64,000 bases of DNA, taken from assembly GCA_053919585.1 (NCBI GenBank), contig CM132815.1; one strand, 5' to 3'. Below are positions 3,254 through 58,824 of this stretch, piece by piece. This stretch comes from Euprymna scolopes (lineage: Eukaryota). Under the pieces are notes generated by a model. The model was not told the origin of the DNA. It was given only the letters and a program-made list of their open reading frames with translations, and did no database searches. Every line of letters starts with the position of its first letter. Within the stretch, counting starts at the first letter, position 1. The translations under genes were made by a program, and so were the position numbers.

Positions 3254-5870
3254 ACAAAGCGCTTCCTGTAGTGACAGTGCGAGTTGATGGGTGTAAGCGC
3301 TCAGCGCTGGTTGACACCGGATGCACCCAAACCCTCATACACAAGAAATGTTGCACCGCATGGACGAAACAGAAGGTCCCAGTATTAACCGTTGGTGGAG
3401 GCTCGCTGGTGTGTTGTGGGGTGAGCATTGTCCATATAAGCGTTGGCGATGCTCCCCCCGGTGGCTGTGAAGGCGTTGGTGATCGACAGGGAACTTCTTG
3501 GATACAACCTTCTCCTTGGAATGGACACTATTACACAGCTGGGTGGAATCACCGTGGACGGCGCCAGTGACGTGAGGTTTTCCCAATGCAAGGAACAGGT
3601 CTGCGCGGCAATCATTTTTGATGAACCTGACTTCTACACGGAATACAACAAGGGCACAAACGCATGAACCGCGTCCTGGAAGTGGTCGGGCGACCAGCCA
3701 CCAGTGTTCTTGCAGAATCGGCTGATGGAGTATCCCCCTCCCACGTGGATCAGGGGGGCAGTACGAGGCAGAATTCCAGGTTTGGATGAATAATGGTTGG
3801 CTGGTTCCATACCAAGAGGATGAGCTCGGGCCACCAAGGGGGGGGGGCTGATCCCCCTGATGGCCGTCAGGTAAGAGAATAGACAGAAGGTGCACCCGTC
3901 CTGGATTACCGAGAACTCAATGAACACGTCAACCCACACACGGCGGGGGCTGACGTCTGAAACTGAGGGAGTGGTAGCAGCAGGGGGCGTACACAGCAAT
4001 CCTGGACTTGCGAAGAGCCTACCTGCAGATATGTGTCGAAAAATCACTGATGCCGTTCCAGACGGTCGAGATTAAAGGGACTCGCTATTGTTTGACCAGG
4101 CTGGGGTTCGGCCTGAATGTGGCCCCGAACATTATGACAGCGATTCTGCAGGCGATCTAGCGTCATGATGAAGCCGTGCAATAAGCGACATCGTCGTATA
4201 TTGACATTTTCGTGAACAAGAGCCTCATGTTTGCCCAGGCGGTGAAAGAACCCTTTGAGAGCTTCGAACTGTCGTGCAGTGCACCTGCAAGATGGAGCGA
4301 AAGTTCTTGGCTTGCATATGAGCGGCAGCGCACATGGATTTGCTGGGGAAGAAGTGGTGACATCCCGGAAGTTCCATCCAACATCATGCGTCGGAGCGTT
4401 TTTAGCATCTGCGGAAAACTGGTGGGCCACTTCCGTGTGTGTTGGTGGCTCCGGGTGGCGGCCATAAAACGATGTGTGACTTCCATATCAACGGGATGAA
4501 CGATAAGGTGCACAATCCCGCCCCGCGAAGCATGTTGGTGGAAGCTATGGCCAGAGTGACCGAGGACGAGCCCATGCGAGGGAGCTGGTGCATCGACGGG
4601 AGTGAGTTTACAGTTTGGGCGGATGTCAGTTCACTCGCCCTTGGCATTGCTCTGGCAGTCGACGGATTTATCGTAGAAGATGCCTGCTGGCTTTGGCCAG
4701 AAAATGACGCCGGGCATATAAACCTGGCTGAGCTTGATGCTACATTCAAAGGGGTAAGTCTGGTGCTTCAGTGGCAGGCCAGAGTGCTACACATTCATTG
4801 TCACAGACTCTACATGTGTGCATCGGTGGATAACCGATGCCTTGAGTGGGAAAGCACAGTTGACAATGAACGCATCGGCCGAACTGCTAATACGGAGACG
4901 ACTTGCTACCCTGACCGAGATCATCAAGGAATTCAACCTGGCCGTAGATGTGACATTAGTGCAGTCCTCTCAGAATCGTGCGGATCGCCTGACCAGAATG
5001 CCACGCCATTGGCTGGACCTGCCGAAAGAAGTGGATGAGCCGGCACCTGTGAATTGTGCTACGGTGGGGCATAGGTTTAGCCTGGGCCATGATGTCCATT
5101 GCCAAAGCAGGCACCCCGGTGTAAACCGAACCCTTTACTTCACCAGGCTGGTCGACCCCTATGTATCAAAGAGAGACGTGAAATCTGTTGTGAGGAGCTG
5201 CACCTGTCCGGTGGAAGAAGAGAAAACTGAGTGTGAGAGGAAATTGGAACAAGCTCGCAATGGACGTAACTCACCACAATGGTGGGCATTTCTTGACGCT
5301 CATCAGTTGCAGACCGTCTAGATCTACATTGTGGCGGCCCCTTCGCTGCCAGGACTCGGCCGCCGTTGTCTGTGAGCTAGAAAGTGTCTTCTTCGAGTGT
5401 GGTCCCCCTTCTAAGATGCTGACCGACAATGGCACCACCTTTATTAGCGAGCAGTTCAAACAGTTCACAGACAGCTGGGTATACATCTGCGATTTCGGTG
5501 CGCCCATGTGTCTAGCAGAAATGGAATTATTGAGAGAAACCATAGGACCGTCAAGACAATCACAGCTAGGAAGGGGTGTACAGTGCCTGATGCGGTCTAT
5601 TGGTATAACATCACCCCTAAGGACGACATTTCACCCTCTACTGCGCCAGCTGAAGCACTGCACAGGTACTACATCAGGGCGAGAGGCATGGAGACCAGCC
5701 CACTGCCCGAGCTGGAGGCGACGAGGGAGAGTATCAAAGAGGGGGATGTAGTCTAACTTAAGAACCCCCACGGCAAGTGCACCACACGCTACATAACCGG
5801 GCATGTTACTGTGGTGATCAGCCTGCAATTGGTGCAGGTTGACGGGGTGCCCTGTCACATCAAGGATCTT
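3254..5870 (+). pseudogene. pol: Gypsy pol (protease, RT, RNase H, integrase), frameshifted
   Basis: Protease ALVDTGCTQT; RT-like FGLNVAPNIM near 4105-4135; RNase H WADVSSLALG...INLAELDA; integrase HCQSRHPG, LTDNGTTF, NGIIERNHRTVK. Confidence 0.88.
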
Positions 5871-6104
5871 CAATCGACATCACAAGCGCAGCTACCACTC
5901 GGCGATGAGAGCGAGACTAGATCCAAGAATAGTGAACCCTCATTCTGGGTTACGCCGACTTTGTCGGACAGCGACCCTAAGATTAGCAGCCTTAAATTCA
6001 CCGACCCTGAAACCGAGGACGAAAGCACAGGCGAGGACAAAGCACCCGAAGAAAAAGGTCACCGCGTCCCTGCCCTCTCTGTGATGGTGATATGAGGGGG
6101 GGAG

Positions 6105-6410
6105 TGTGACGAAAACTGTGGGAACGCAGGCTTACCTCTTAAACGGCCTCGGTCTGCACTTTGCCGACGCAGCGTCATGATGCTGAAAAGGGCCCAAGAT
6201 GGCGCCTGCGACCTTATATAAAAATGCAGTCTCGCAGAATGTCATGTGCTCTCGCGCACATATGCAAATTTGGAGGACTCTGTCTTTTATAAAAACAGGC
6301 CACTGGAGCACATGGGGCAGACCTGAAAACGAGTCTACGGAAAGTAACGACGGACGACGTTGCTGCAGTGAGCTGAGGTTTTGTGTACTCTTTTTTTCTT
6401 TGCAACAACA
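6105..6410 (+). repeat. 3' LTR of the Gypsy element
   Basis: Starts TGTGACGAAAA directly after the PPT, ends TGCAACAACA, followed by TSD CAAAC. Confidence 0.92.
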
Positions 6411-6620
6411 CAAACTCAATATATATAATTTTTAATGGTTGACAAACTCAATAATTAACATTTTAATAGTTGCTAAACTATATATATGACATTTTTAATG
6501 GCTGCCAAACTCAATATCTAACATTTTTAATAGCTACCAACCTACCTCAATATATAACATTTGTAATGGCGGTCAACCTCAATATATAACATTTTAATGG
6601 ACGGCAATTTCAATATATAA
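6411..6620. repeat. Continuation and end of the 31-32 bp satellite
   Basis: Same unit resumes in register after the TSD (CAAAC TCAATATAT...). Confidence 0.9.
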
Positions 6621-7196
6621 TAGTTTTATATTTGCATTTTTGACAAGTGTAAAGGTAACAATGTTAGCAATAGTAAATAAACATTTTATTAACTAGTATG
6701 AATGTTGGCGAGGGTAATATTAAGTAAATGTCAGGATATCCTGGCGGCAAACAGAAATAGACATGACTGGCATGACTGAAGCAGGATATCGAATAATATT
6801 ACAGAGGGTTGGGGGAGCAGAACAGAGTTTCGCATCAAAGTTGAGAAGTGTCTGATAATGTAGAGGGAATCTAAATGGGTTGCGACGAAACTCTGTCCAT
6901 ACATCGCTCATATTAAGACTAAGTTAGAAAAGCAAGAAATAATTAGAGCAGCGGGTGTTAAAAAAATTAGGTTCCTAAACAAAACACTCTGGAAATGCAG
7001 GTGTAGAAATATAGGTGATGACGTCACGCCTTCGAGGGGAGAAACAAAAGGATTTATAAGAGTTGGAGTCGGAATATGTGATAGACAAGATGCGCCCGAT
7101 AGAGTAGAAATCTATGTGAATATTGCCTCGGGACTCTGCCCGTGCGTCGCCATCTTAAGACTAAGCTAGAAAAACAGTTAAGAAGTTGTTAAAATA

Positions 7197-9150
7197 TGTT
7201 TTACTATAATAAGGGTATGACACCAATGTATTCAACGTTCGTTTTTATAACCACAGTTATAATAACCAACCAATCAGAAGCTTCAAATGTTACTATAAAA
7301 ATGTCGAGTTTGGATTCAATCAGTTTGCCGTCGTCTCTGTCGCGAACCTGCATTTGATTCTTCGCTGCCATCTTTGTTATTAGGAATTACTAAACATCCA
7401 AGATCGAAACTGCGTTTGATTCTTCGCCACCATCTTTGTTACGAGGAATTACTTAACACCAAGCTTGGGACTACATTAATTCTTCGCCGATTTGATTTGC
7501 TGCCGCCATCTTTGTTCAACATAATGTCTCAAAACTTTACAGGTTGTGCGCCCAGCTATCGTCTTTTCTTTGATGGATCGGAATCTAAATTCGAATTGTG
7601 GCAGGTAACATTTCTGGGGTATTTAAGGATTCGGAAACTACACAAAGTTATACAATCTCCAACAGAGAATCCTAACGACCCCGAATTTCTCGAAAAGAAC
7701 GCGATTGTTTTTGCAGAACTGATTCAATACTTAGATGATAGAAGTCTATCTCTGACCATAAGAGATGCCTTGAATGATGGACGGAAAGCATTGAACATAT
7801 TAAGAGAGCATTATTTATCGAATGGGAAACCGAAAAGTATATATCTATATACAGAACTAACGGCTCTAAAACGTAACGAGGATAAAACTATTACCGACTA
7901 CGTTATAAGGGCAGAAACAACCGCCAATGCCTTAAAACTCTCGGGTGAAATAATAAGCAATAGCCTGTTAATATCAATGACCCTCAAGGGACTGAAACCC
8001 ATACATTTCAGTGAATTTAAAGTGGCATTGCACAGCTACGAAGAGACTAATCGTATGCTCGTGGACAATAATAACTCCAGCAATATTATGAAGTTCAAAA
8101 ATGCTTCTCGAAAACAGACACCGCCAAATTGCGCAACTCACCGCAATGTGTTCCCCAAAAGTAATTTTTCCAAGAAAAAGAATAAAATTATCTGCTATAA
8201 TTGTGGACGACCCAACCACAAAAGTTTCCAATGTCGATATAAAAGCTCAAAAATGGACTCCATGAAAAACGTTGAGAACTTTGATGAAGAACATACATTT
8301 CTATTCACATGTAACTTTGACAATACGACAAACAGTACAAATCTTCTTGTAGACTCTGGCGCTACAGCACACGTTAACACAAAGGATTCTGATTTTTTTT
8401 ATTTTGATTCAAACTTTAATCCAGAGAGTCATTTCGTCAAACTGGCCGACGGTAGTCAAATAAACGATATAGTCTTGAAAAGAGGCGATGCTAAAATATC
8501 ACTAAAAAATAATAATGGTGGAATTTGTAACTGTATTCTATAAAATGCTCTTTTCATACCTACATTTTAGGAAGACATATTTCTCGTGCAGGCCGTCATT
8601 AAACAAGGCGCGAATATAAAGTTTGACCAAAACAAGTCAAAATTGATATACCCTAATGGAACTGTATTTGACATTAAAGAAAATGGACGACTATATTATT
8701 TAAAAAGTATGGTTTCCTCAAAAACTGCCCGTCACTACTTGAAAACCTGGCATAAAATTCTAGGACACTGCAATACACTGATATTAAAAAATTACCAAAT
8801 GTAATCGAAAACATGAAAATAATACCTTCAGACGATCTCCCAAATTGTGATCTTTGTAGATTACGATAAAAACAGTCCAGCATATTTAATCTACTTGACA
8901 AAAATGCCACAAAAAAGGTTAGATGTGTAAAAATCAATGATTCATTAAATTTAAAAAAAATAATGAACCAGTGGACTAAAAACGTGAGGAAATATTACCT
9001 AGTATCTTAATCGGTCATCACGATGAAAATATTAATACTGACGACAATTGCGGTAAAACTATTGACGTAAATATTAACCCGATACGTCGATACTTGATAA
9101 GGGAGCGAAAAATCCAGACTTCTGAAAAATTGAAAAGATACAAGACTACG
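7197..9150 (+). mobile_element. Ty1/Copia remnant: putative 5' LTR, PBS, gag-protease and pre-integrase region; integrase core deleted, no RT
   Basis: PBS-like GGTTGTGCGCCCAG (7542-7555, cf. copia GGTTATGGGCCCAG) right after ...TTTACA; CCHC CYNCGRPNHKSFQC; protease LLVDSGATAH; WHKILGHCN; RRYLIRERK tail motif near 9085-9110. LTR start uncertain (TG at 7197 or 7288). Confidence 0.85.
7524..8543 (+). pseudogene. gag: Copia gag-protease ORF (stop at 8543; degenerate continuation to about 8870)
   Basis: MSQNFTGCAPSYRLFFDGSESKFELWQ...ELIQYLDDRSLSL...DGRKALNILREHY, typical of animal Copia gag. Confidence 0.82.
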
Positions 9151-9303
9151 AGTGGATTACTGTTACTCATTTTCGTTTTTAGGGGCAAATAATCTGCTTT
9201 CTGATTTTTGTAGTAACAAAAAGGAAATTTTTTGAACGAATTTTCAATAAAAATAGAATAGAAAATGCTTTTTCCCAGCGTGTTTATAAACAGTTTATGT
9301 TTA

Positions 9304-9331
9304 TCTATATATATAAATTGAAAATGTGTAT

Positions 9332-9387
<56 letters not shown>

Positions 9388-10254
9388 ATTTCCCTACCAA
9401 ATAACTCTGTAAATTTTCGGTCTAAAGACTCGAGATTTGACATCAGGAGTAATGCGATTTGACATCAGGAGTAATGAGATTTGACAAAATCTTTTTAATC
9501 GGTTTTCGGCCAGAAATTTGGCTGTCAAGGGATTAAAGTTCAACAATTTGATCTTTGAGCCTAAACACTTGAAATTTTTAATGTATGGTACTTTGACATG
9601 AATCAAACTTTATAATTTGTATTTGAGCTCCAAAAAATAAATTTTAAGGGGTCTAAATTGGGGGCAAAGTACAAAAAAAAAACATTTGACCCCTGCGGTC
9701 TACCAAATTACTCAGCCAATTTCTGGTCTAAGCATTCGAAAACTTGGTCTGCCAGGGGGTCAACTATAAAAAGATTTGATCTTTGCGGTCTCTAGCAAAC
9801 TACTCAGCTAATTTTGGGTCTAAAAATTTATAATTTATACAAAACAAGTATTCAGACACGCGGCAAGCATTTTAATCAGTTTTGGGGCGAAAATTTAGCT
9901 GCCAAAAGGTCAAAGTTGACCTTTGCAGATTCTACTAAATTTCTCCGGTCTAAAAACTTGAAATTTGGGTCTAAAAACTTGACATTTTTTTTTTAGGTCT
10001 AAAAACTTGAAATTTTAGATGTAGGTAACTTGGACATGAGTAAAACATTTTCTTTTGATTTGAGACCCAAATAATAAATGTTAAGGGTTCAAAATTGGGG
10101 TCAAAGTTAAAAAAAGAAGATTGACCTCTGCGGTCTCTACGAAATCAGATAGTTTTTGGTCTAAACATTTGAAATCTTACATAAAGTGTATTTACACATA
10201 GGGCAAGTTTTGAACAGTACATAGGGCCCGAGCAAAGCCGGGCTGAACGACTAG
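9304..10254 (+). mobile_element. Non-autonomous Helitron carrying a (GT)n microsatellite
   Basis: 5' TCTATATATATAAA after an A; (GT)n at 9325-9386; 3' hairpin GCCCG-AGCAAAGC-CGGGC then CTAG (10251-10254) followed by T; A|T target and no TSD. Confidence 0.85.
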
Positions 10255-11005
10255 TATTCTATATTTTCTATTTCAAGATGCTTCTAATTGCCGCCACTTT
10301 TTCAGCTTCATAATTGGGGTTCGCGTGCCTTTCCATCTTAATAAATAAAAAATAAAAATAAAGCGTGCAAATACCAGCTAGCGCTATCTCGATAACACAA
10401 CATGAGGATGGTCTTTTTACTTTTACTTCCGAGATAAACAAGACCAACAAAACTTAAGAACTTTTTCTCTGGTGAGGGATTTTTAAATCCGAAATTTATT
10501 AGAAAAAAAAAAGAAAAAATGTTTTCGGATTTATAAGCGTGTTTTTAAAACAATTTATCTTTTTATTATATATTTTTCATTTCAAGATTACTTGCTGACA
10601 CTTTTTCGATTACATACATATGTGAGTGTGCGGGTGTGCGTGTGCGTGTGCGTGTGTGTATATGTGTGTGTGCACGTTTTAAAACACAGCGTAAATCATA
10701 AATCTATGACGTCACGTCAAAAGCTTAGTCCGTAGAATATAAAACTAAACATATCAAGGTCTCGATTGGCCTTCGGGACAAGATCAAAGTGTAGTATCTG
10801 TTCTTCAGATGCTGCACTTCTATTTCTTGTTCTCTTTCGTTGGAGGAGAAATCCTTCACGATTGAGACAATTTTTATTTTTGTACCTTTTCTCCACGTTA
10901 AAAAAGACCCTGGTGTCTAACTCTGTCCCGTGGAGAGGCATAGTAAATAGGTACTTTATTTATTTATTTATTTATTTATTTATTATTATTATCATCATCA
11001 TCATC

Positions 11006-11036
<31 letters not shown>

Positions 11037-11191
11037 AGTTTATTTTCTGAAAAAGTAGTTAAGATCTTTGATATTTCGAAATGAGACAACATACGCAATG
11101 TATTTATTAGATTATTTGGAAAAAGTGACTAACAAACAGAGGAATACACACGCACACAAAAACAGAAATTATTATTATTATTATTATTATT

Positions 11192-13698
11192 TACATGGAA
11201 GTCACCACTTATTAAGGCCCGGAGAGCACTCGGGATAAGGGTTATTGCGTGTACAGTAATTAATGAGGCAATATCGTAGTAATCGTTAGTAATGGAGATT
11301 TGATAAAGTGTCTTACTTAAGGGGGCGGTTCCTTAGGAACTTGTTTATGTTGGACTTGAAGACATCCAAGTTGTAATAAGGTGAGAAACAGGCAAACGGA
11401 AGAGAGTTCCACAGGCGTGCACTTCTAAGAAAGAAGATTTGTTCATGAAATCTACGCTTTGATTTAGGCACAGATAAAGAGTGGGGAAAATTACTGACAG
11501 TGGTTTCAGCTAGACGGGTGTTTTTCGTGAAAGATTATTGAGGGGGGACCAGACGAGCACTTGCCATGGAACCTAGATTCCAGTAAAGCAACTGGCCCTG
11601 ATGGCATCCCAATTATAGTGTTAGAAAAGCTTCAACCAGAACTTGCTCCCATACTTACGAAACTATTTAAGCGCTGCCTTGAGGAGAAGTGCTTTCCGAC
11701 TCCCTGGAAGACCTCATCAGTTTGCCCTGTATTTAAGAATTCAGGTGATAAGTCATCTCCCTCTCAGTACAGACCTATAAGTCTCCTGTGTGTTATGAGT
11801 AAGTTGCTGGAATCCATATTAAATAGAGAAATAGTCAACCACCTCAGCAGGAACAACCTTCTTAGTGACACACAATATGGTTTCCGCTCTGCAAGATCTA
11901 CAGCAGATGTGCTGACGGTTATATCCCACAGGATTAGTGAATCTCTTGACAAAGGCTTCCTTTCTAGGGCAATTGCTCTTGACATATCAAAGGCCTTCGA
12001 CAAGGTATGGCATAAGGGTCTACTTCACAAGATTTCCAGCTACGGTATAACTGGAAATGTTTTCTCAATCATTAAATCATTTCTCTCCGATAGGCTCATA
12101 AGAGTAGTGGTAGATGGACAAAAATCGGAGGCCTGCAATATAAATGCTGGAGTCCCTCAGGGGTCAATCCTGGGCCCAACTCTCTTCCTGATCTACATCA
12201 ATGACCTTCCTAAACACATACTTAAATCATTCGTTGACATCTCTGCTGATGAAACGACCATCTACGGCAACACATCAAAGGTTGTAAATGACGAAGTTCT
12301 CTCTGATTCTCTCTCCTCTGATCTTGAGCGCGTGGTTCAGTGGGGAAAGATGTGGCTAGTTACCTTTAATGCATCCAACACCAAACTCCTATCCTTACAT
12401 AATCAATGCTATGACCCCCATCTGGCATCAATTGTGATGGATGGCTCTCGTCTGGGTGAGGCCCCGTGTTTTGACAAGCTTCTGGGTTTGACTTTTACTC
12501 CTGATCTGAAATGGAACACGTACATCAAGTCTGTTGCCAAGGTCGCTGGAAAGTTGGTGGAATCCTTCTACCGCTCCAGAAGATATCTCACTACTGATGC
12601 AATTCTCTATCTATATAAAAACCAAGTACGTCCAAGGATGGAATACTGTTGCCATATCTGGACAGGAGCTGCTAAAAACAGCCTATCCTTCCTTGAAAGA
12701 GTACAAAATAGACTTCGTGGCTTAGTGGGTGATGCCCTTTTCTCTACCCTGCAACCTCTCTCCCACAGAAGAGATGTTGCCAGCCTATCCTTGTTTTATC
12801 GTTATTTCCATGGCAGGTGCTCGTCTGAACTCCAATCTCTGGTCTCCCCTCGCCAATCTTTCACGAAAAACACCCGTCTAGCTGAATCCAGTGTGAAAAA
12901 TTTCCCCCACTCTATATCTGTGCCTAAATCAAAACGTGGATTCCATGAACAAAGATTCTTTCTTATAACTGCACGCCTGTGGAACTCTGTTCCGTCTGCC
13001 TGCTTTCCACCGGACTACAACTTGGATGTCTTCAAGTCCAACGTTAACAAATTCCTAATGAACCGCCCCTTTAAGTAAACACTTCATCAAATCTCCACAC
13101 TAACGTAATGTACTTGCAATAACCCTTATCCCTGAGTGGCTTCCGGGCCTTGATTAGTGGTGATCACTGTGTAAAAAAATAGATAAATAAATAACGATAA
13201 AACGAAGACACGCTCGAACCGTCTCTTCTGTGAGAGAGAGGTTGCAGGGAAGAGAAAAGGGCATCCCCCACTAGGCTACGAAATCTATTTTGTACCCTGT
13301 CAAGGCAGGATAGGCTGTTTTTAGCAGTTCCTGTCAGATATGGCAGCAGTTCTCCATACTTGGGCATACTTGGCTTTTGTATAGGTAGAGAATTGCATTA
13401 GCAGTGAGATATCTTCTGGGGCGGTAGAAGGATCCAACCATTTTTCCAACGACCTTGGCAACAGATTTGATGTACGTGTTCCATTTCAGATCAGGACTAA
13501 AGGTCAAACCCGGAAGCTTGTCAAAACATAGAGCCTCCCCAAGACGAGAGCCATCGATTTCAATTGATGCCAGATGGGGATCATAGCGTTGATGGTGTAA
13601 AGATAGAAGCTTGGTTTTAGATGCATTAAAAGTAACCAGCCACATCAACCCCCATTGTACCACACGCTCGAGATCAGAGGAGAGAGAATCAGAGAGAT
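11192..13698 (-). mobile_element. 5'-truncated CR1/L2-group LINE, split into 11192-11571 and 13191-13698 by a younger copy
   Basis: ORFs 13334-13663 and 13164-13367 match the RT C-terminus; ...TTGCCATGGAA|ATAACGATAAAAC rejoins across the insertion; family 3' end at 11192. Confidence 0.88.
11572..13190 (+). mobile_element. 5'-truncated CR1/L2-group LINE with an open ORF2 RT segment of about 500 aa
   Basis: ORF to 13078: KATGPDGIP, YRPISLL, LDISKAFDKVWH, GVPQGSILGP, ISADET (catalytic YADD mutated), RRDVASLSLFYRYFHG; A-rich tail 13172-13190. Confidence 0.93.
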
Positions 13699-17524: not shown

Positions 17525-17830
17525 ATCTGTGGTGCAGTTGTTAGAGTTCTTGGAAAAATTCAGTTGTACATCAATATTCTCCTGAAGGTTGAAGGTTCAA
17601 TCTCCAATTGCGAATTACCGAGAACCTCTATCCAATCATGGTTGACGGAATGAGAGCATGCTACCCCCGTGAAGTAAATAAAGGGTCCTGTTCAAAATTT
17701 CATGCAGATTCCAAAATTTGACAGAGAGATTCCAGAGTTCAACAAGATACACCTGACGAAGGTCGGAGGTTACATTGACCGAAACGTTGTGAAAATCATA
17801 TTCAAGATGAAAACACTAGTCCAAAAAAAA
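17525..17830 (+). mobile_element. SINE-like element: tRNA-derived head plus minimal hammerhead tail (family B)
   Basis: A box TGGTGCAGTTG (17530), B box GGTTCAATCTCC (17594), hammerhead-like CAC-CTGACGA-A-GGTCG..TGACC-GAAAC-GTT-GTG (17750-17791); tail recurs at about 9 other sites. Confidence 0.65.
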
Positions 17831-19069: not shown

Positions 19070-19411
19070 CTTAGAAATGAACAAAAAAGAATTTAAAAAA
19101 AATAAAACAAATATATTAATATCAAAGAAAATGTCATTATTTATAACCGGCTTCATCTATATAATTATAAAACTATGTGGACCGTTCTCGCTTGCTCGTT
19201 TGATTCTTGTCTTTGACGGTCGGACAATTCTATCATTAAAAAAGGGATAACAGCTGAATTTTCGCATCCGGCTTCAAATCTTTTGGCCAGCTGTAATTGT
19301 GATACCCTGCACTGATGCTTCCTGAAAGGATGAAGCAGTAGTGTCTGTAGGTATTAAAAATAATCATAGTAATAATAATATGTCAAAAAATTGTTAATTT
19401 ACTGCCTGCAC

Positions 19412-19545
19412 AGCAGCAGCCAAATAGCGCAACGGTTAGAAGCTCCGACTGTCGTTTGGGTAGTCGAGTTTCGATCCCGGCTTGAGGTAGTTGCTCTAGC
19501 TGCACCGATGAGCTGTGATATAGCGAAACAGTGCTGTATGTGAAT
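19412..19545 (+). mobile_element. Short tRNA-head plus hammerhead element (family A), copy 1
   Basis: A box TAGCGCAACGG (19425), B box GTTTCGATCC (19468), hammerhead 19501-19542, TA tail; homologous to 58646-58785. Confidence 0.78.
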
Positions 19546-19593
19546 ATATATGTATATAAAATTTTAAAAAAGGAAGCACAAGATAAGTGGATA

Positions 19594-19644
19594 GCCCTTA
19601 ATCCGCGGAGTTTCGAAGAAATACTCTCCTTCTCATCAGAGGGC
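19594..19644 (-). ncRNA. Type I minimal hammerhead ribozyme (Penelope terminal repeat)
   Basis: GCCCT-CTGATGA-GAAGGAGAGTATTTCTTC-GAAAC-TCCGCGGA-TTA-AGGGC; copies at 21471-21521 (core CTGGTGA) and 57205-57255. Confidence 0.8.
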
Positions 19645-20650
19645 AGGAATTAGCAAAATGCAGGATCGGATTTTGCATATAAAAGTATTTAATAAAACTA
19701 CAAGTAAGTCACAGATCTTACTTGGTTAAAAAAAAGGGTGAGGTAAGGGGAACAGGAGGCAAAAGAAAAATGATAAAAAGATTTCACATGAATGGATAGT
19801 CCGGTGAAGGGTAAAAATCCAAGAATGGTAAAATCCAAAACGGTCGAATTTAAAATTACAATCCAATGGGTAAATTCCAAATGGTCCAAAATAATCCAAA
19901 AGGCAGAGTTCCTTGGAAAAAGCGCAAATGGAATGAATTCCAAATCATTAAAAGAAAAAGCCCTGGAGAGAATATTTAAAACACGTCTGTCAAGGCTGGA
20001 TGAATCAAAAAAAATAAGGTTTAAAAAAAAAACGAAAACGGTGAAAGTTTAAATTTGAAAAGCAAGGTCAAACAAGCTTAACTCTGCCAATGCCCACTTT
20101 TCAATTAAATGGACCATCCTAAAAAAAGTTAAGTCTTACACTCCAGGATCTAAGTCTTGTCATCTCTGTACATCTGAAGCAATAACTATTATAACCTCCC
20201 CTCAAAGTAGTAATATAATAAACTCTAAAAACGAACTGATCTCCTATTGCAAACATATGTCCAAGTTTAAATATAGTAAATTCGAAATCACATAGCTATT
20301 AATTTAACCCTTCAAATATATATCTTTTCCCATAGTTTTTTTTTTAATATAATCTTATTTTTAAAGCTTTTTATATTTTTAATTTTATTTGCTTTTCTTT
20401 ATTTCTTTGGCCGGTTTTCCATCTGCTGTCTCCGTTTTATGGTATAAGTATACCTATTAATTAAATATATACATCAATCTACTCATTTTTATTCTATGTA
20501 TTTGTTTACTTATATTTTACTATATGCATTTACATACACATTTATTTGCCTTATTCCGGAGTTTGTAGATACCGGCCTCTCCCTCCCCTTATTTTGTATG
20601 TAAGTATGTATGTTTTTGTTTAACTTGTATATGTTTTTGGATATGTGTAT

Positions 20651-20947
20651 NNNNNNNNNNNNNNNNNNNNNNNNNNNNNNNNNNNNNNNNNNNNNNNNNN
20701 NNNNNNNNNNNNNNNNNNNNNNNNNNNNNNNNNNNNNNNNNNNNNNNNNNNNNNNNNNNNNNNNNNNNNNNNNNNNNNNNNNNNNNNNNNNNNNNNNNNN
20801 NNNNNNNNNNNNNNNNNNNNNNNNNNNNNNNNNNNNNNNNNNNNNNNNNNNNNNNNNNNNNNNNNNNNNNNNNNNNNNNNNNNNNNNNNNNNNNNNNNNN
20901 NNNNNNNNNNNNNNNNNNNNNNNNNNNNNNNNNNNNNNNNNNNNNNN
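20651..20947. other. Assembly gap (N run); other gaps at 53645-53812, 54661-54815 and 56346-56557
   Basis: Runs of N; the gaps at 20651 and 56346 fall at the same microsatellite tract of two Penelope copies. Confidence 0.99.
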
Positions 20948-21768
20948 AACTTTGCCATTTATTTGTTCTTCTGATCAGTTTTCTTAATTTAACTCTGGGA
21001 TTTTCACGTTCATATCTAAGCTGACCTAATTATTAACGCTAACTTTCGCGCTTTTTGTCTTTATCAGTTTGACCTTGCTTTTCAAATTAAAACTTTCACC
21101 GCTTTTTGGGGGTTTTTTTTTAACCTTAATTTTTTTGATTCATCCAGCCTTGACAGACGTGTTTTAAATATTCTCCCCAGGGCTTTTTCTTTTAATGATT
21201 TGGAATTCATTCCATTTGCGCTTTTTCCAAGGAACTCTGCCTTTTGGATTATTTTGGACCATTTGGAATTTACCCATTGAATTTTACCATTCTTGGATTT
21301 TTACCCTTCACCGGACTATTCATTCATGTGAAATCTTTTTATCATTTTTCTTTTGCCTCCTATTCCCCTTACCTCACCCTTTTTTTTAACAAAGTAAGAT
21401 CTGTGACTTACTTGTAGTTTCATTAAATACTTTTATATGCAAAATCCGATCCTGCATTTTGCTAATTCCTGCCCTCTGGTGAGAAGGAGAGTATTTCTTC
21501 GAAACTCCGCGGATTAAGGACTATCCACTTATCTTGTGCTTCCTTTTTTAAAATTAAATATGTTTTTTAACTCTTTTTCAAGATGTCTTTTAACATGTTT
21601 TATTAATCATTTGTTCAAATTATAAGCTCTATTTCCTTTTCGGTTTTATTGAGCTTTTACATCTGACTGAGTTTATTTTACTTGTAAATATTAACTCTTT
21701 AATATTTATAATGTATTTTAAGTTTACCATTTTGATTACCTTGGTAAACTTATTGTAATTTTTATTTT

Positions 21769-21822: not shown

Positions 21823-22849
21823 TGGGCCCAACTCTTTTCCTGATCTACATTAATGATCTTCCAAATCACATCCTTACATCATTTGTAGACATCTATGCTG
21901 ACGACACTACCATTTATGGTAGCACATCTAAGACAGTAAACGACCAAGTTCTCTCCAATTCTCTCTCCTCTGATCTTGAGCACGTAGTACAATGGGATAA
22001 GGAGTGGCTGGTTACTTTTAATGCATCTAAAACCAAGCTTCTCTCTTTACATCATCAACATTCTGATCCACATATGGCATCAATTGAAATGAATGGCGCT
22101 CGTCTTCAGGAGGCCTCAAGTTTTGACAAGCTTCTTGGCTTGACCATTACTCCTGATCTTAAATGGAACACGTACATCAAATCTGTTGCCAAGGCCGCTG
22201 GAAAAATGGTGGGATCTTTCTATCGATCCGGTAGATATCTCACTGCTGATGCTATTCTCTATCTATATAAGAGCCAGGTACGTCCAAGGATGGAATACTG
22301 TTGCCACATCTGGGCAGGAGCTGCTAGAAAGGACTTGGCCTGCCTTGATAGAGTTCAAAATAGACTTCGTAGCCTCGTAGGAGATGTCCTTTTCTCTTCC
22401 TTGCAACCTCTATATCACAGAAGAGATGTTGCGAGTTTGTCTCTGATGTATCGTTATTTTCATGGAAAGTGTTCGACTGAGCTTCAATCTATGGTGCCCC
22501 CTCGCCAAACTTTCACAAGAAACACTCGTCTAGCTGTAAACACTATCAATAATTCCCTCCACTCTTTATCTGTGTCTAAACATAAACGTAGATTCCATGA
22601 ACAAAGCTTCTTTCTTAGAACTGCACGCCTGTGGAATTGTCTTCCGTTTTCCTGCTTTCCGGCTGACTACAATATTGTTGTCTTTAAGTCTAACATAAAT
22701 AAGTTCTTGATGAGCCGCTCCATATAAGTTATCAAATTTACCAAATTTTCATTACTAATGATTACTATATTGTCCAATTTCTACTGTACACTCTTTAACC
22801 CTTATCCTTGAGTGGCCTCTTTGCCTTGATAATGTGGTGATGCCTATGT

Positions 22850-23112: not shown

Positions 23113-23822
23113 TGCTGATCTGAAACGGAACACGTACATCAAGTATGTTGCCACAGTCGCTGGGAAAATGGTGAGATCCTTCTACCGATCCAGAAGATAT
23201 GTCACTAACGATGCAATTCTCTATCTATATAAAAACCAAGTACGTCCAAGGATGGAATACTGCTGCCACATTTGGGAAGGAGCTGCTAAAAACAGCCTAT
23301 CCTACCTTGACAGAGTACAAAATAGACTTCGTGATTTAGTGGGTGATGCCCTTTTCTCTTCCCTGCAACCTATCTCCCACAGAAGAGACGTTGCGAGCCT
23401 ATCTTTGTTTTATCGTTATTTCCATGGCAAGTGCTCGTTTGAACTCCAATCTCTGGTCCCCCCTCGCCAATCTTTTACGATAAACACTCGTCGAGCTGAA
23501 ACCACTCTCAATTATTTTCCCCACTCTTCATCTGTGCCTAAATCAAAACGTAGATACCATGAACAAAGCTTCTTTCTTAGAACTGCACGCCTGTGGAACT
23601 CTCTACCGCTTGCTAGTTTCCCTCCTGACTTCAACTTGGATGTCTTCAAGTCCAACATAAACAAATTCCTGATGAACCGCCCCTTAAGTAATGACACTTT
23701 ATCAAATCTCCCATACTAACGAATACTACAACACTACCCAATTGATTACTCTACACACAATAACCCTTATCCCTGAGTGGCTTCTGGGTCTTGATAAGTG
23801 GTGACCCCCATGTAAAAAAAAA
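23113..23822 (+). mobile_element. 5'-truncated CR1/L2-group LINE
   Basis: ORF 23168-23719 is the RT C-terminus; 3' end TAACCCTTATCCCTGAGTGG...CATGTAAAAAAAA. Confidence 0.92.
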
Positions 23823-52705: not shown

Positions 52706-52792
52706 TTCTTCTGATGAGTTAAGGGCAATAGATTCATTGATTGATAAAATTAAGTGAATGGTTTTGTGCTACGAAACAGATACTGTCAAGAA
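52706..52792 (+). ncRNA. Type I hammerhead ribozyme with extended stem II
   Basis: TTCTT-CTGATGA-[55-nt stem II]-GAAAC-AGATACT-GTC-AAGAA; canonical core and GUC cleavage triplet. Confidence 0.8.
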
Positions 52793-52918: not shown

Positions 52919-53033
52919 TTGTAATTCAATGAATTTTAAAAAAACTCTCATTGAAATGAAATGAAGTGGTTCAGTTTCTTATCAAAGAATATTTATTATT
53001 CTAAGCAAGACAAAGAATGCTTTAGAAAATTAA

Positions 53034-53081
53034 TCTCCTTAACCTATAGGGTTTCGATGTCTACCATCTCATCAGAGGAGA
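53034..53081 (-). ncRNA. Type I minimal hammerhead ribozyme
   Basis: TCTCCT-CTGATGA-GATGGTAGACATC-GAAAC-CCTATAGG-TTA-AGGAGA. Confidence 0.8.
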
Positions 53082-53873
53082 GAAAATATTAGCAAATAGT
53101 TATAAAGGTATGCACCTTATTTGCTAAAGTCAGTGAGACATGGAAAGTCAAAGTGAAAATAATGCATTTATCAGAAGTCCTGTAGCAGGAAGATTTGTAG
53201 AAAAAGGATATGAATGTTTTTTTTAGATCCAGCTTGCTTGGTAAAATCCATGTTATACGTTCTCTACATCCGTTTTGGTAAAGTTACATATTGGGTAATC
53301 CGCATATGATGGCTACATATGTGGATACATGTTTCCGTGATCACCCGCGTTGGGGGATTACGTTTTCAGGCCAAGAATTATCGTCGGGAACTGATATTTC
53401 AAACCAAAACAGTTTCTTATTTCGTTTACAAAGTTAGAATGTAACATGGGTGTGGGTTATGAGCGGGGAAAGAATAAATAAGCTCTTTGAAGATAATAAA
53501 CCTCTTCTTTTTTACTTCCCTTTTTTATATTACTTTTTAAGTTTATCTATCCCATCTTTTGGTTTTTACTGTATAAGGTACTTGAGAATTTAGTATTTTT
53601 GTCTTGCGGTTAGTAATTAAAAACATTCCTCATGGTTATTGAGTNNNNNNNNNNNNNNNNNNNNNNNNNNNNNNNNNNNNNNNNNNNNNNNNNNNNNNNN
53701 NNNNNNNNNNNNNNNNNNNNNNNNNNNNNNNNNNNNNNNNNNNNNNNNNNNNNNNNNNNNNNNNNNNNNNNNNNNNNNNNNNNNNNNNNNNNNNNNNNNN
53801 NNNNNNNNNNNNTAAATGCAATTGTAGACACCGCACACTTTGCCCAGTCCAAAATAAATGTCTAACAAAAAGT

Positions 53874-54245: not shown

Positions 54246-55063
54246 CGATACAAAATTGCTTTAAAACTAACAATAACAATAGAAAACAAACAAACAAATA
54301 AATAAATTAAACAAACATGAATATACATAAACGATCACACATATATGTGTATATATATATGTATATATATGTGCATGTATGTGTGTACACATAGGTATAT
54401 TTATATATATAAAAAAACAAAAAAAGGAAGGAAAAGATCTACCTTAAACCACTAACCTAGTTCTAAAACAGATCCTTTGTTCGATAAAATGCATGCCCAT
54501 TGGCTGATAGGAAGGGGCGCGGTGGATACTAGAAAGCTGATTGACTAACTAGAAATCCTCAACATATATAAAAACAAGAAGCAACCCCAGAATTCACGCA
54601 TAAGCCTGACGGATCCTATAGTGGATGAAACGCAGAATATTCAGTGTAGCTTAATCGCCANNNNNNNNNNNNNNNNNNNNNNNNNNNNNNNNNNNNNNNN
54701 NNNNNNNNNNNNNNNNNNNNNNNNNNNNNNNNNNNNNNNNNNNNNNNNNNNNNNNNNNNNNNNNNNNNNNNNNNNNNNNNNNNNNNNNNNNNNNNNNNNN
54801 NNNNNNNNNNNNNNNAAGATATAGTGAGAGTTAGAGATACATAGAGAGTGAGATAGACTTCAGGAAAGAAACGTTGGTTAACTCAGCTTTAGATACAGTA
54901 TATTAATAGATATTTGTAGTTATTATATTTATTGCCCTCTACCCAATTTTATTTTATCGATTCTCTTATAAAAAAAACGAAAAAACAAATAAATGAAATA
55001 AATAAATTTACACATATTATTAGTGTCTTTAGTTACCTTGTTTCCCTGGTTTGCGACAAAAAG

Positions 55064-55114
<51 letters not shown>

Positions 55115-55117
<3 letters not shown>

Positions 55118-55279
55118 GTAATATATTCATGCACAATTACAGAGCTCCCACGCAATTCTCCCATAATAGACAATACTATTTTGTCACCAAATTATCCTTC
55201 CTCCGACCCTCCCTCTGATACAATTATTAATCCAACAAACGAATCAACCAGCCCCTATATTTTCAATCATACAACTAGC

Positions 55280-55340
<61 letters not shown>

Positions 55341-57346: not shown

Positions 57347-57350
<4 letters not shown>
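55115..57350 (+). mobile_element. 5'-truncated Penelope-like element, same family as 19556-21775
   Basis: NVIYSCTI...TYIGATSTLIKKRISNHTSSF...CHLCTS; 3' repeat with hammerhead 57205-57255; (TA)n on both sides. Confidence 0.88.
57205..57255 (+). ncRNA. Type I minimal hammerhead ribozyme (Penelope terminal repeat)
   Basis: GCCCT-CTGATGA-GAAGGAGAGTATTTCTTC-GAAAC-TCCGCGGA-TTA-AGGAC. Confidence 0.78.
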
Positions 57351-57387
<37 letters not shown>

Positions 57388-58439: not shown

Positions 58440-58645
58440 CTGTAAAAAAAATTACAAAAGCATTAGTTCATAAGGAATTAAAACGCTTGTTTCGAATGAT
58501 AAATTTGTGCTAGGACATTGTAGGAACCGGAAGTCAGTAATTGTGCATATTACAAATCAGATTTCTCGTAAATGCCCGCTTTACAAAAAACAAACAAACA
58601 AAAAAAACAAAGCAAAAATCTGACACCTGTTCACATACCCATCTT

Positions 58646-58782
58646 AGCAGCAGTCGAATAGCGTAACACTTAGAAGCGCGAACTGTCGTCTAGGCGGTTG
58701 AGTTTTAAACCTGGCATGAGGTAGTTGCTTGCCTAGCCGCACTGATGAGCTGTGATACAGTGACACAGTACTGTATGTGGAT

Positions 58783-58785
<3 letters not shown>
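58646..58785 (+). mobile_element. Short tRNA-head plus hammerhead element (family A), copy 2
   Basis: Colinear with 19412-19545; hammerhead CCGCA-CTGATGA-GCTGTGATACAGT-GACAC-AGTACT-GTA-TGTGG at 58737-58780; (TA)n tail. Confidence 0.78.

Positions 58786-58824
<39 letters not shown>

What the first reader, a model, noticed from the sequence alone, without database searches (positions are those of the whole stretch)
19412..19545. A ~135-bp element that is just a tRNA-type Pol III promoter fused to a hammerhead ribozyme (family A; second copy at 58646-58785)
Seen: two diverged copies 39 kb apart, each with a tRNA-like head (A box TAGCGCAACGG, B box GTTTCGATCC in copy 1), a short linker and a type I hammerhead, ending in a TA tract. 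Each copy has different core lesions (CCGATGA in one; GACAC plus a stem II C>T in the other). Their consensus is a perfect ribozyme: CGCA-CUGAUGA-GCUGU GAU ACAGC-GAAAC-AGUACU-GUA|UGUG, with a palindromic stem III (ACAGTACTGT). Established: Pol III-driven hammerhead repeats exist (schistosome SM-alpha type retrozymes), and Penelope elements carry minimal hammerheads with palindromic stem III that can cleave as dimers. Inference: this is a minimal self-cleaving SINE/retrozyme, probably copied by the Penelope RT; copy 1 abuts a Penelope repeat. I cannot tell whether the family has been described.
Basis: partly seen in the sequence, partly recalled or inferred. Interest (0 to 1): 0.8.

Follow-up and report, generated by a model that had tools for sequence, protein, structure and literature searches.

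The report
Hammerhead-ribozyme retroelement copies, truncated and dead
The two window sequences are old, 5'-truncated, ribozyme-dead copies of a very abundant ~284-bp non-coding mobile repeat of a 5.9-Gb mollusc genome that carries a hammerhead ribozyme and inserts into (TA)n tracts in the manner of Penelope-dependent "retrozymes": a real and tidy example of a known kind, not a new one.

Summary
Both copies, their motifs and their different core lesions are in the sequence as described. They are not a complete 135-bp element. The family unit is about 284 bp: a 150-nt 5' part, a module with A-box-like and B-box-like motifs, a linker, a type I hammerhead, then (TA)n. The window copies are 5'-truncated (0.6 and 0.5 unit).

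Genome-wide counts, reversed-pattern control 0 in each:
- Family-specific linker: 28,268 places.
- Intact 42-nt ribozyme, exact: 6,683 places.
- Identical head-to-tail unit junction: 4,597 places.

Insertions share one fixed 3' end in (TA)n and run 0.5 to 2.5 units upstream. Units within one insertion share private variants. This is the partial-tandem architecture of Penelope-like elements and animal retrozymes. Sister families keep the ribozyme through a compensatory stem II change.

Not shown:
- Self-cleavage, RNA circles and Pol III transcription.
- tRNA ancestry: tRNA detectors find nothing.
- Rfam membership: hammerhead models score below threshold.
- The partner Penelope element.

Verdict: a new member of a known kind, closest to metazoan non-LTR retrozymes and schistosome SM-alpha. 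The scan has already reached the same conclusion on other windows of this genome (s1-279839, s1-295493).

The parts
19380..19550 (+). Copy 1: a 5'-truncated family-A insertion covering unit positions about 108-284 (0.6 unit). It is about 86-88% identical to intact copies.
   Evidence: BLAST and local alignment to full-length copies.
19425..19477 (+). tRNA-like module of copy 1, with A-box-like TAGCGCAACGG (19425-19435) and B-box-like GTTTCGATCC (19468-19477).
   Evidence: Read directly from the sequence. No tRNA was called by ARAGORN or Rfam.
19496..19550 (+). Hammerhead of copy 1, inactivated. The core has U4>C (CCGAUGA, 19505-19511), the stem III palindrome is broken (ACAGUGCUGU), and stem I is weakened. 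The predicted cleavage site is 19538/19539.
   Evidence: Column-by-column comparison with 56 copies. The hammerhead fold of this copy has a positive energy of +2.8 kcal/mol.
19544..19560 (.). Short TA tract shared tail-to-tail with the 3' end of an unrelated hammerhead-bearing repeat on the minus strand.
58640..58789 (+). Copy 2: a 5'-truncated family-A insertion covering unit positions about 139-284 (0.5 unit). It is about 82-83% identical to intact copies.
58733..58789 (+). Hammerhead of copy 2, inactivated. CUGAUGA is intact (58742-58748), the core has A14>C (GACAC, 58762-58766), and stem II has C>U giving a G.U wobble. The stem III palindrome is intact (58765-58774). The predicted cleavage site is 58775/58776.
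58786..58822 (.). (TA)n tract at the 3' end of copy 2. This is the family's usual target and tail.
   Evidence: The same tract is seen in nearly all sampled copies.

Best explanation
Family A is a non-coding, non-autonomous retroelement of the retrozyme / Penelope-dependent type.

**Unit layout.** The unit is about 284 bp, and each part below follows the previous one:
- A structured 5' part of about 150 nt.
- A degenerate tRNA-like module with A-box-like and B-box-like motifs.
- A linker.
- A type I hammerhead. Its stem III is a 10-nt palindrome, and the predicted cleavage site (GUA|U) lies 14 nt before the unit end.

**Shown here.**
- The master sequence has an intact ribozyme core and stems.
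- Insertions end at one fixed point (GGATGACTATA) in (TA)n.
- Insertions extend upstream for 0.5 to 2.5 units, with a peak at exactly one unit.
- The head-to-tail joins are tight and identical.

**Inferred, by analogy with published retrozymes and Penelope-like elements.**
1. Transcripts that span two ribozymes fold into a double hammerhead through the palindromic stem III.
2. They cut themselves to a unit-length RNA with 5'-OH and 2',3'-cyclic phosphate ends.
3. A tRNA ligase (RtcB) circularises this RNA.
4. A Penelope-type RT / GIY-YIG endonuclease nicks a (TA)n tract. The UAUA at the unit junction pairs with the nicked DNA, and reverse transcription runs around the circle or along a multimer for a variable distance.

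The A/B-box module may let RNA polymerase III start inside an upstream unit, as proposed for schistosome SM-alpha. This step is the least supported.

**The window copies.** Both are single, 5'-truncated and core-mutated, so they are dead relics.
For: **Family size and specificity (reversed control 0 in each).**
- Linker 26-mer: 28,268 places.
- Exact 42-nt ribozyme: 6,683 places.
- Identical head-to-tail junction: 4,597 places.

**Unit and ends.**
- 58 aligned copies define the unit.
- All insertions share one 3' end. Their lengths are 0.51-2.34 units, with many at 1.00-1.03. About half of the full-length copies have an abutting 5'-truncated upstream unit.
- (TA)n flanks both sides.

**Ribozyme.**
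- The core is intact in 35 of 58 sampled copies, and all stems pair in 33.
- All three regions of the unit decay at the same rate, as expected for neutral decay after insertion.
- The dimer fold uses a 10-bp intermolecular stem III at -34.2 kcal/mol. Two monomer minimum-energy folds give 2 x -12.5, and the monomer hammerhead fold is only -7.9.

**Selection at family level.**
- Sister family A2 (3,991 places) has stem II GUUGU/ACAAC where family A has GCUGU/ACAGC.
- A younger sister family keeps an identical ribozyme while its 5' part is only about 80% identical to family A.
- That younger family changes a 5' hairpin pair from A-T to G-C.

**Co-synthesis of units.** In five multi-unit insertions of the younger sister family, both full units share 1-5 variants that are absent from the other four arrays and a sixth insertion of that family.

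**Other evidence.**
- Hammerheads with unrelated stems but the same core occur in the window at 19575-19650(-), 57200-57260(+), near 53075(-), 52706-52792(+) and near 17750(+).
- Machinery is present. There are 15,395 first-look GIY-YIG candidates. One example is an open 806-aa RT + GIY-YIG frame that ends in a minimal hammerhead-like motif and (TA)n.
- The sequence occurs in RNA libraries, including contigs that cross the unit junction.
- Published parallels: (TA)n bias, pseudo-LTRs and tails of Penelope-like elements (PMC8557442), metazoan retrozymes (PMC7229834, PMC7761336), and retrozymes as Penelope derivatives (bioRxiv 10.64898/2026.07.22.740005).
Against: - No cleavage, circle or Pol III transcript was observed. 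The raw-read run showed no pile-up of molecule ends at GUA|U (table 6). RNA-library contigs can contain DNA or read-through transcripts.
- Rfam gives only sub-threshold hits to the hammerhead clan: 18.4 and 22.4 bits against a gathering score of 48.5, and with the wrong topology.
- tRNA detectors are negative.
- The absence of TTTT in the unit is not significant (P 0.22-0.39).
- The one Penelope element read has a different 3' end, so no partner that shares the 3' module is known.
- In the older family A, within-locus unit identity is no higher than between-locus identity. Circle and linear multimer templates therefore cannot be told apart.
- The circular unit fold is only weakly better than shuffles (z -1.5 to -2.0).
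Confidence: 0.8

Rival explanations
1. It is a classical tRNA-derived SINE. Pol III would transcribe it from the A/B boxes and a LINE would copy it, and the hammerhead-like stretch would be an incidental or relic part of the body.
For: A-box-like and B-box-like motifs lie at tRNA-like spacing (43 nt), with D-loop-like and T-loop-like strings. The unit holds no TTTT run. Some copies start just upstream of the A box, such as copy 2 and L027.
Against: - The module is in the middle of the unit, not at its head.
- There is no poly(A) or LINE-type tail.
- Insertions exceed one unit and show partial tandems in (TA)n, which LINE target-primed reverse transcription of a Pol III transcript does not produce.
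- The ribozyme module is the best-conserved part between sister families and shows a compensatory change.
- tRNA detectors are negative.
Confidence: 0.07
2. It is a retrozyme-type element with no Pol III involvement. Flanking Pol II transcription or read-through would transcribe it. The tRNA-like module would be a relic, or would serve another role in the RNA, such as ligase or processing-enzyme recognition or structure.
For: - tRNA detectors fail, and the B-box-like motif departs from the canonical B box, either by an extra T or by two mismatches in gapless register.
- Sister family A2 lacks the 5' half of the A box.
- Reads in an oligo-dT single-cell library lie on both strands and mostly run on into unlike flanks, as read-through would give.
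- Published animal retrozymes need no internal Pol III promoter (PMC7229834).
Against: - The B-box-like string and the GGTTAGAA-type string are kept in all three sister families, although the surrounding sequence has diverged by 20-35%.
- The design matches schistosome SM-alpha, described as a SINE-like element with a type I hammerhead (PMC8490949, citing Ferbeyre 1998).
Confidence: 0.45
3. It is satellite-like DNA that spreads and forms arrays by DNA-level processes such as unequal exchange or replication slippage in (TA)n. Retrotransposition would play no part, and the ribozyme would be irrelevant to spread.
For: Short arrays of 2-3 units with nearly identical units exist. Units of one array share private variants, which gene conversion or duplication could also produce.
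Against: - There are about 28,000 dispersed units on all large contigs.
- They share one fixed 3' end and show graded 5' truncation.
- The arrays are short, of the form partial + N full units, and always in the same polarity relative to the fixed end.
Confidence: 0.05

Closest known systems
Metazoan non-LTR retrozymes (Cervera and de la Pena 2020, PMC7229834; review PMC7761336)
   Same: - Non-coding repeats of 150-400 bp carrying a type I hammerhead.
- Head-to-tail copies and GC content below 50% (44.7% here).
- Thousands of copies per genome, and also known from a mollusc (mussel).
- Proposed life cycle: self-cleavage, ligation by a tRNA ligase, then reverse transcription by another element's RT.
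   Different: - Most copies here are dispersed single or 1.2-2.5-unit insertions in (TA)n, not longer arrays.
- Stem III is a bare 10-nt palindrome, as in Penelope-type minimal hammerheads.
- The unit contains a tRNA-like A/B-box module.
- RNA circles are not shown here.
Penelope-like elements and their non-autonomous derivatives (PMC8557442; Cervera and de la Pena 2014; Lunse et al. 2017; bioRxiv 10.64898/2026.07.22.740005)
   Same: - Partial-tandem pseudo-LTR layout.
- Insertion bias for (TA)n microsatellites.
- A hammerhead near the 3' end with a short or palindromic stem III, expected to act as a dimer.
- The genome holds many RT + GIY-YIG open frames.
   Different: - The unit has no protein-coding part.
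- The one autonomous Penelope element read here has an unrelated 3' end, so a shared 3' module, the usual mark of a partner, is not shown.
- Stem I carries an internal loop and a distal helix, so the ribozyme is less minimal than typical Penelope hammerheads.
Schistosome SM-alpha / Sj-alpha SINE-like elements (Ferbeyre et al. 1998; Laha et al. 2000; cited in PMC8490949)
   Same: A unit of about 300 bp (SM-alpha is 335 bp) that combines a type I hammerhead with a Pol III-type promoter region. The Pol III part is from my own knowledge of Ferbeyre 1998, which I could not read here. Both are highly repeated and occur dispersed and in tandem.
   Different: - Different phylum, and sequence relatedness was not tested.
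- The SM-alpha ribozyme is a fast, tertiary-stabilised monomeric hammerhead with a real stem III. Here stem III is a palindrome that favours dimers.
- The (TA)n targeting and graded partial tandems seen here are Penelope-like.

Membership tests
Hammerhead ribozyme, type I | Conserved core CUGANGA ... GAAA, with a cleavable NUH triplet. | tested here: met
   The family majority has CUGAUGA, GAAA and GUA|U. The core is intact in 35 of 58 sampled copies, and there are 6,683 exact 42-nt matches. It is NOT met in either window copy (U4>C; A14>C).
Hammerhead ribozyme, type I | Three helices around the core, with stem I open and stems II and III closed. | tested here: met
   - Stem I is CCGCA/UGUGG plus a distal UAG/CUA.
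- Stem II is GCUGU/ACAGC.
- Stem III is ACA-GUAC-UGU, or a 10-bp intermolecular palindrome.
- In every pair of these helices, the standard pair or a wobble of it is by far the commonest state.
- Stem II shows a compensatory change to U-A in family A2.
Hammerhead ribozyme, type I | Score at or above the Rfam gathering threshold. | tested here: not met
   There was no hit at gathering on the window. On intact copies the best hit was Hammerhead_3, at 18.4 and 22.4 bits against a threshold of 48.5. Short-stem-III variants are known to be poorly covered, but this remains a failed formal test.
Hammerhead ribozyme, type I | Self-cleavage at the predicted site. | not testable with these tools
   Raw reads showed no end pile-ups, but the library (oligo-dT single-cell, low depth) is unsuited to this test.
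Metazoan non-LTR retrozyme | A short non-coding unit with a type I hammerhead, found in head-to-tail copies. | tested here: met
   The unit is about 284 bp. There are 4,597 identical junctions. Of the first 100 exact ribozyme hits, 30 lie in 13 clusters at 279-285 bp spacing.
Metazoan non-LTR retrozyme | Accumulates as unit-length circular RNA. | tested here: inconclusive
   The sequence, including junction-spanning contigs, is present in RNA libraries. On a tandem reference a circle cannot be told from a multimer, and DNA carry-over is not excluded.
Penelope-dependent non-autonomous element | Pseudo-LTR or partial-tandem insertions with a microsatellite target. | tested here: met
   Insertions have a fixed 3' end in (TA)n, graded 5' ends and abutting truncated upstream units. 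This matches the description in PMC8557442.
Penelope-dependent non-autonomous element | 3' end shared with an autonomous Penelope element of the same genome. | tested here: inconclusive
   Only one autonomous copy could be read (L087), and its 3' end differs.
tRNA-derived SINE (Pol III type 2 promoter) | A recognisable tRNA-derived region at the 5' end. | tested here: not met
   ARAGORN and the Rfam tRNA model find nothing in any family, even at relaxed thresholds. The module starts at unit position about 154 of 284.
tRNA-derived SINE (Pol III type 2 promoter) | A and B boxes at tRNA spacing. | tested here: inconclusive
   The A-box-like motif matches 7 of 9 specified positions (8 of 9 in the young family). 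The B-box-like motif matches 7 of 9 in gapless register, or needs an extra T. They lie 43 nt apart. My rough estimate of the chance of such a pair in 284 nt is about 0.02-0.03.
tRNA-derived SINE (Pol III type 2 promoter) | A LINE-derived or A-rich 3' tail. | tested here: not met
   The 3' end is the hammerhead plus (TA)n.

The most novel reading that the evidence does not exclude
The A/B-box module is a working internal Pol III promoter. Any insertion of at least about 1.5 units would then be a self-contained circular-RNA factory: Pol III start, two flanking hammerheads, then RtcB ligation. That would be a natural counterpart of engineered ribozyme-assisted circular RNA expression. It would also be a retrozyme lineage that has escaped dependence on host promoters. 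Such families may account for part of the unclassified repeats in cephalopod-type genomes reported to have almost no SINEs.
Probability: 0.3. Interest if true: 0.6.

Novelty: new member of a known kind. Interest (0 to 1): 0.35.

Why it matters
It adds a large and well-defined mollusc family to the animal retrozymes, with about 28,000 units plus sister families of thousands.

Its anatomy links three things that are usually described apart:
- Penelope-style insertion into (TA)n with partial tandems.
- A dimer-prone hammerhead.
- An SM-alpha-like box module.

The graded 0.5-2.5-unit insertions, with a peak at one unit and private variants shared between units, are useful data on how Penelope-type reverse transcription copies a circular or multimeric template.

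Practical point: Rfam thresholds and tRNA/SINE detectors miss these elements. They are therefore likely to sit among the unclassified repeats in published annotations of such genomes (PMC13218726 reports almost no SINEs and 40% unclassified repeats in a cuttlefish). I did not establish the species of this window.

Tried and rejected
- **Rfam.** At gathering threshold on the window it found nothing. At permissive E-values on the two window copies it found nothing relevant.
- **tRNA detectors.** ARAGORN was run on the window, on 29 loci and on family representatives down to an 85% threshold, and found nothing. At 80% only spurious calls appeared. The Rfam tRNA model found no hit on intact copies.
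- **Within-locus identity.** In the older family A, within-locus and between-locus unit identity show no clear difference, so this test cannot show co-insertion there.
- **Reads (read laying).** There were no pile-ups of molecule ends at the cleavage site and no clean unit-length back-joints. The few 'goes back' joints do not match a simple 284-nt circle.
- **TTTT runs.** Their absence in the unit, as a sign of Pol III passage, is not significant.
- **Circular fold of the unit RNA.** It is only weakly below shuffles.
- **Penelope partner.**
  - The one autonomous element fetched (L087) has an unrelated 3' end.
  - tblastn of its protein found nothing in the window, and a single short piece (residues 1-33 of 806) among the other loci held.
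- **Unavailable paper.** Ferbeyre 1998 (PMC108972) is not held. Statements about the SM-alpha Pol III boxes therefore rest on my own knowledge and on PMC8490949.
- **Consensus sequences.** A majority-rule string of the non-coding repeat was used only as an alignment yardstick.

Full report
**What is in the window**

The two stretches exist as described and align at about 80% identity.

Copy 1:
- A-box-like TAGCGCAACGG at 19425-19435 and B-box-like GTTTCGATCC at 19468-19477.
- A hammerhead-shaped stretch at 19496-19550.
- A TA tract after it.

Copy 2:
- It has the same layout at about 58640-58789.
- It is followed by about 35 bp of (TA)n.

- Copy 1 has CCGAUGA (U4>C), a broken stem III palindrome and a weakened stem I.
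- Copy 2 has GACAC (A14>C) and a C>U in stem II that leaves a G.U wobble.

Rfam at gathering threshold and ARAGORN report nothing in the window.

**The family is much larger and longer than the finding says**

A search of the window's own 5.9-Gb genome gave thousands of first-look candidates. After a (TA)n tract the element begins AATGCTCCC... and runs about 150 nt before the tRNA-like module.

The unit is 283-284 bp with 44.7% GC. Landmarks in unit coordinates:

| Feature | Unit position |
|---|---|
| A-box-like motif | 154 |
| B-box-like motif | 197 |
| CUGAUGA | 237 |
| Predicted cleavage | after 270 |

Against this unit, copy 1 covers positions about 108-284 (window 19380-19550). Copy 2 covers positions about 139-284. 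So the "135-bp element" is a 5'-truncated piece.

Whole-genome pattern counts, each with a reversed-pattern control of 0:

| Pattern | Mismatches allowed | Places |
|---|---|---|
| Family-specific linker, 26-mer | up to 3 | 28,268 |
| Intact ribozyme string, 42-nt | 0 | 6,683 |
| Head-to-tail junction GTATGTGGATGACTATAATGCTCCCTATC | up to 2 | 4,597 |

**Insertion architecture**

All sampled insertions end at the same point, GGATGACTATA followed by (TA)n, and most also have (TA)n upstream.

Measured against a three-unit yardstick, insertion lengths run from 0.51 to 2.34 units, with a clear pile at 1.00-1.03 units. About half of the full-length copies carry an abutting, 5'-truncated upstream unit joined through the same ...GACTATAATGC... 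junction.

Of the first 100 exact ribozyme hits, 30 lie in 13 clusters at 279-285 bp spacing.

This is the pseudo-LTR or partial-tandem layout with microsatellite targeting that has been described for Penelope-like elements (PMC8557442). It is also the tandem habit of animal retrozymes (PMC7229834, PMC7761336).

**The ribozyme**

The majority rule of 56 copies gives CUAG-CCGCA / CUGAUGA / GCUGU-GAA-ACAGC / GAA / ACAGUACUGU / A | UGUGG-AUGA-CUA. It has these parts:
- An intact 11-nt core and a GUA cleavage triplet.
- A 5-bp stem I, followed by a 4-nt bulge and a 3-bp distal helix.
- A 5-bp stem II.
- A stem III that is a 10-nt palindrome.

The core is intact in 35 of 58 sampled copies, and all stems also pair in 33. 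The three regions of the unit decay at equal rates, as expected for neutral decay after insertion.

Folding energies:

| Fold | Energy (kcal/mol) |
|---|---|
| Monomer hammerhead fold | -7.9 |
| Monomer minimum-energy fold (a different structure) | -12.5 |
| Two-copy cofold with 10-bp intermolecular stem III and swapped stems I | -34.2 |

The monomer hammerhead fold is therefore not the monomer's preferred structure. The two-copy cofold is the classical double hammerhead. This fits published work that short-stem-III hammerheads cleave as dimers (Forster 1988 and Lunse 2017, as cited in PMC7761336).

Rfam recognises the core only below threshold and with the wrong topology: Hammerhead_3 at 18.4 and 22.4 bits against a gathering score of 48.5.

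**Evidence of selection above the level of single copies**

Loose ends in the read layout pointed to other upstream sequences joined to the same ribozyme.

Sister family A2:
- It occurs at 3,991 places.
- It has the same ribozyme and tail, but stem II is GUUGU/ACAAC in place of GCUGU/ACAGC. This is a compensatory pair change.
- It has a canonical-looking GGTTCAATCC and a different 5' part.

Younger sister family:
- Its loci are 97-98% alike.
- It keeps the linker nearly unchanged and the ribozyme identical, while the rest of the unit is only about 80% like family A.
- It changes one pair of a 7-bp hairpin in the 5' part from A-T to G-C.

Six of its insertions were read. Five have the form partial + 2 full units. 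In each of those five, both full units share 1-5 variants that are absent from the other four arrays and the sixth insertion. The units of one insertion were therefore copied from one template, or homogenised later.

The window also holds hammerheads with unrelated stems but the same core. They lie at 19575-19650(-), 57200-57260(+), near 53075(-), at 52706-52792(+) and near 17750(+). So the motif is not a chance string.

**The tRNA / Pol III claim**

Evidence in favour:
- Box-like motifs match 7-8 of 9 specified positions each, 43 nt apart.
- D-loop-like and T-loop-like strings are present.
- The GGTTAGAA-type string and the B-box-like string are kept in all three sister families.

Evidence against, or simply missing:
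- ARAGORN and the Rfam tRNA model find nothing in any family, even at relaxed thresholds.
- The module is internal, not a head.
- A2 lacks the 5' half of the A box.
- The lack of TTTT in the unit is not significant.

I treat Pol III transcription as possible, at about 0.3-0.45, and not as shown.

**RNA evidence**

Four organism labels hold words of the family.

In an oligo-dT metatranscriptome and in raw single-cell reads the family is present, and some contigs cross the unit junction. However, there is no pile-up of molecule ends at the predicted site and no clean sign of a circle. Most raw reads run on into unlike flanks, as read-through transcripts would.

This does not test cleavage.

**The Penelope link**

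The genome has 15,395 first-look GIY-YIG candidates. Open frames reach 870 aa, and many sit in inverted or tandem pairs.

One copy (L087) is an open 806-aa frame with RT and C-terminal GIY-YIG. It ends in a minimal hammerhead-like motif and (TA)n. Its 3' end is unlike family A, and I could not fetch more elements. The partner is therefore not identified.

The repeat beside copy 1 carries a Penelope-type hammerhead on the minus strand and shares the short TA tract tail-to-tail with copy 1. It has two parts:
- 19554-20072 is inverted.
- 20066-21624 is direct, and the same repeat recurs at 55627-57358.

No RT is present in the window.

**Most likely mechanism**

Shown:
- An intact master ribozyme.
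- A fixed 3' end in (TA)n.
- Graded 5' ends, with a peak at one unit.
- Tight, identical junctions.
- Co-derived units within an insertion.

Inferred:
1. Transcripts spanning two ribozymes form a double hammerhead and release a unit-length RNA.
2. A tRNA ligase circularises it.
3. A Penelope-type endonuclease nicks (TA)n.
4. The UAUA at the unit junction pairs with the nicked DNA, and the RT copies the circle or a multimer for 0.5-2.5 units.
5. Microhomology at the next UAUA favours resolution at exactly one unit.

Only insertions with two ribozymes flanking a full unit can seed the next round. Both window copies have one mutated ribozyme and are dead.

**Comparison and novelty**

This is a new member of a known kind. 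The closest known systems are:
- Metazoan non-LTR retrozymes.
- Non-autonomous derivatives of Penelope-like elements.
- Schistosome SM-alpha, in its design.

Earlier follow-ups of this scan reached the same reading for a 321-325-bp sister family elsewhere in this genome. My tests were made independently on family A.

Noticed in passing
window 19554-21624 and 55627-57358: A repeat of about 1.7 kb is present as an inverted 5'-truncated copy (19554-20072, minus) abutting a direct copy (20066-21624), and again at 55627-57358. It ends in a hammerhead: CUGAUGA, a 7-bp stem II, GAAAC and the palindrome UCCGCGGA. The hammerheads lie at 19575-19650(-) and 57200-57260(+). The layout is Penelope-style, but ORFs at and near the repeat (22074-22727, 23168-23719, 54932-55738, 56050-56637) have no Pfam hit.
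   Followed up: partly
window 53020-53090 (minus strand): Another hammerhead motif with its own stems: UCUCCU/AGGAGA, GAUG/CAUC and the palindrome CCUAUAGG.
   Followed up: no
window 52706-52792 (plus strand): A hammerhead with a very long stem II insert.
   Followed up: no
It has a tRNA-like head plus a minimal hammerhead (CUGACGA ... GAAAC-GUU|GUG, with stem III ACGU). It is unrelated in sequence to family A, and BLAST finds about seven fragments in the window.
   Followed up: partly
L087:352-2769 (G000:C12:14502651-14505068): An open 806-aa frame with RT and C-terminal GIY-YIG, which is the canonical Penelope layout. It is followed by a roughly 700-nt tail that ends in a hammerhead-like motif (UUGAAGA where CUGAUGA is expected, stem III ACGU) and (TA)n. 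Many near-identical GIY-YIG hits genome-wide suggest a recently active Penelope family.
   Followed up: partly
window 4439-13078: Remains of an LTR retrotransposon: integrase core (5233-5751), copia-type gag with a zinc knuckle (7374-8543) and an RT (11561-13078).
   Followed up: no
L010:2696-2815, L005:2044-2158, L025:99-217, L026:2672-2797, L018:3012-3126: Matches to 5S rRNA occur close to family-A insertions: 70 and 41.6 bits (above the gathering score of 38) and one at 28.1 bits (below it). Sub-threshold U2 snRNA matches (38.3 and 30.6 bits against 46) occur there too. These are probably 5S-derived and U2-derived repeats, of the kind reported in large numbers in a squid genome (PMC6962438).
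   Followed up: no
family-A alignment (58 copies): The least conserved columns are CpG sites, such as GCCGAAT, GCGCAACGG, GTCGTTT and the C11.1-G12 step of the ribozyme, which gives the recurrent G12>A lesion. This suggests CpG hypermutability of these repeats.
   Followed up: partly
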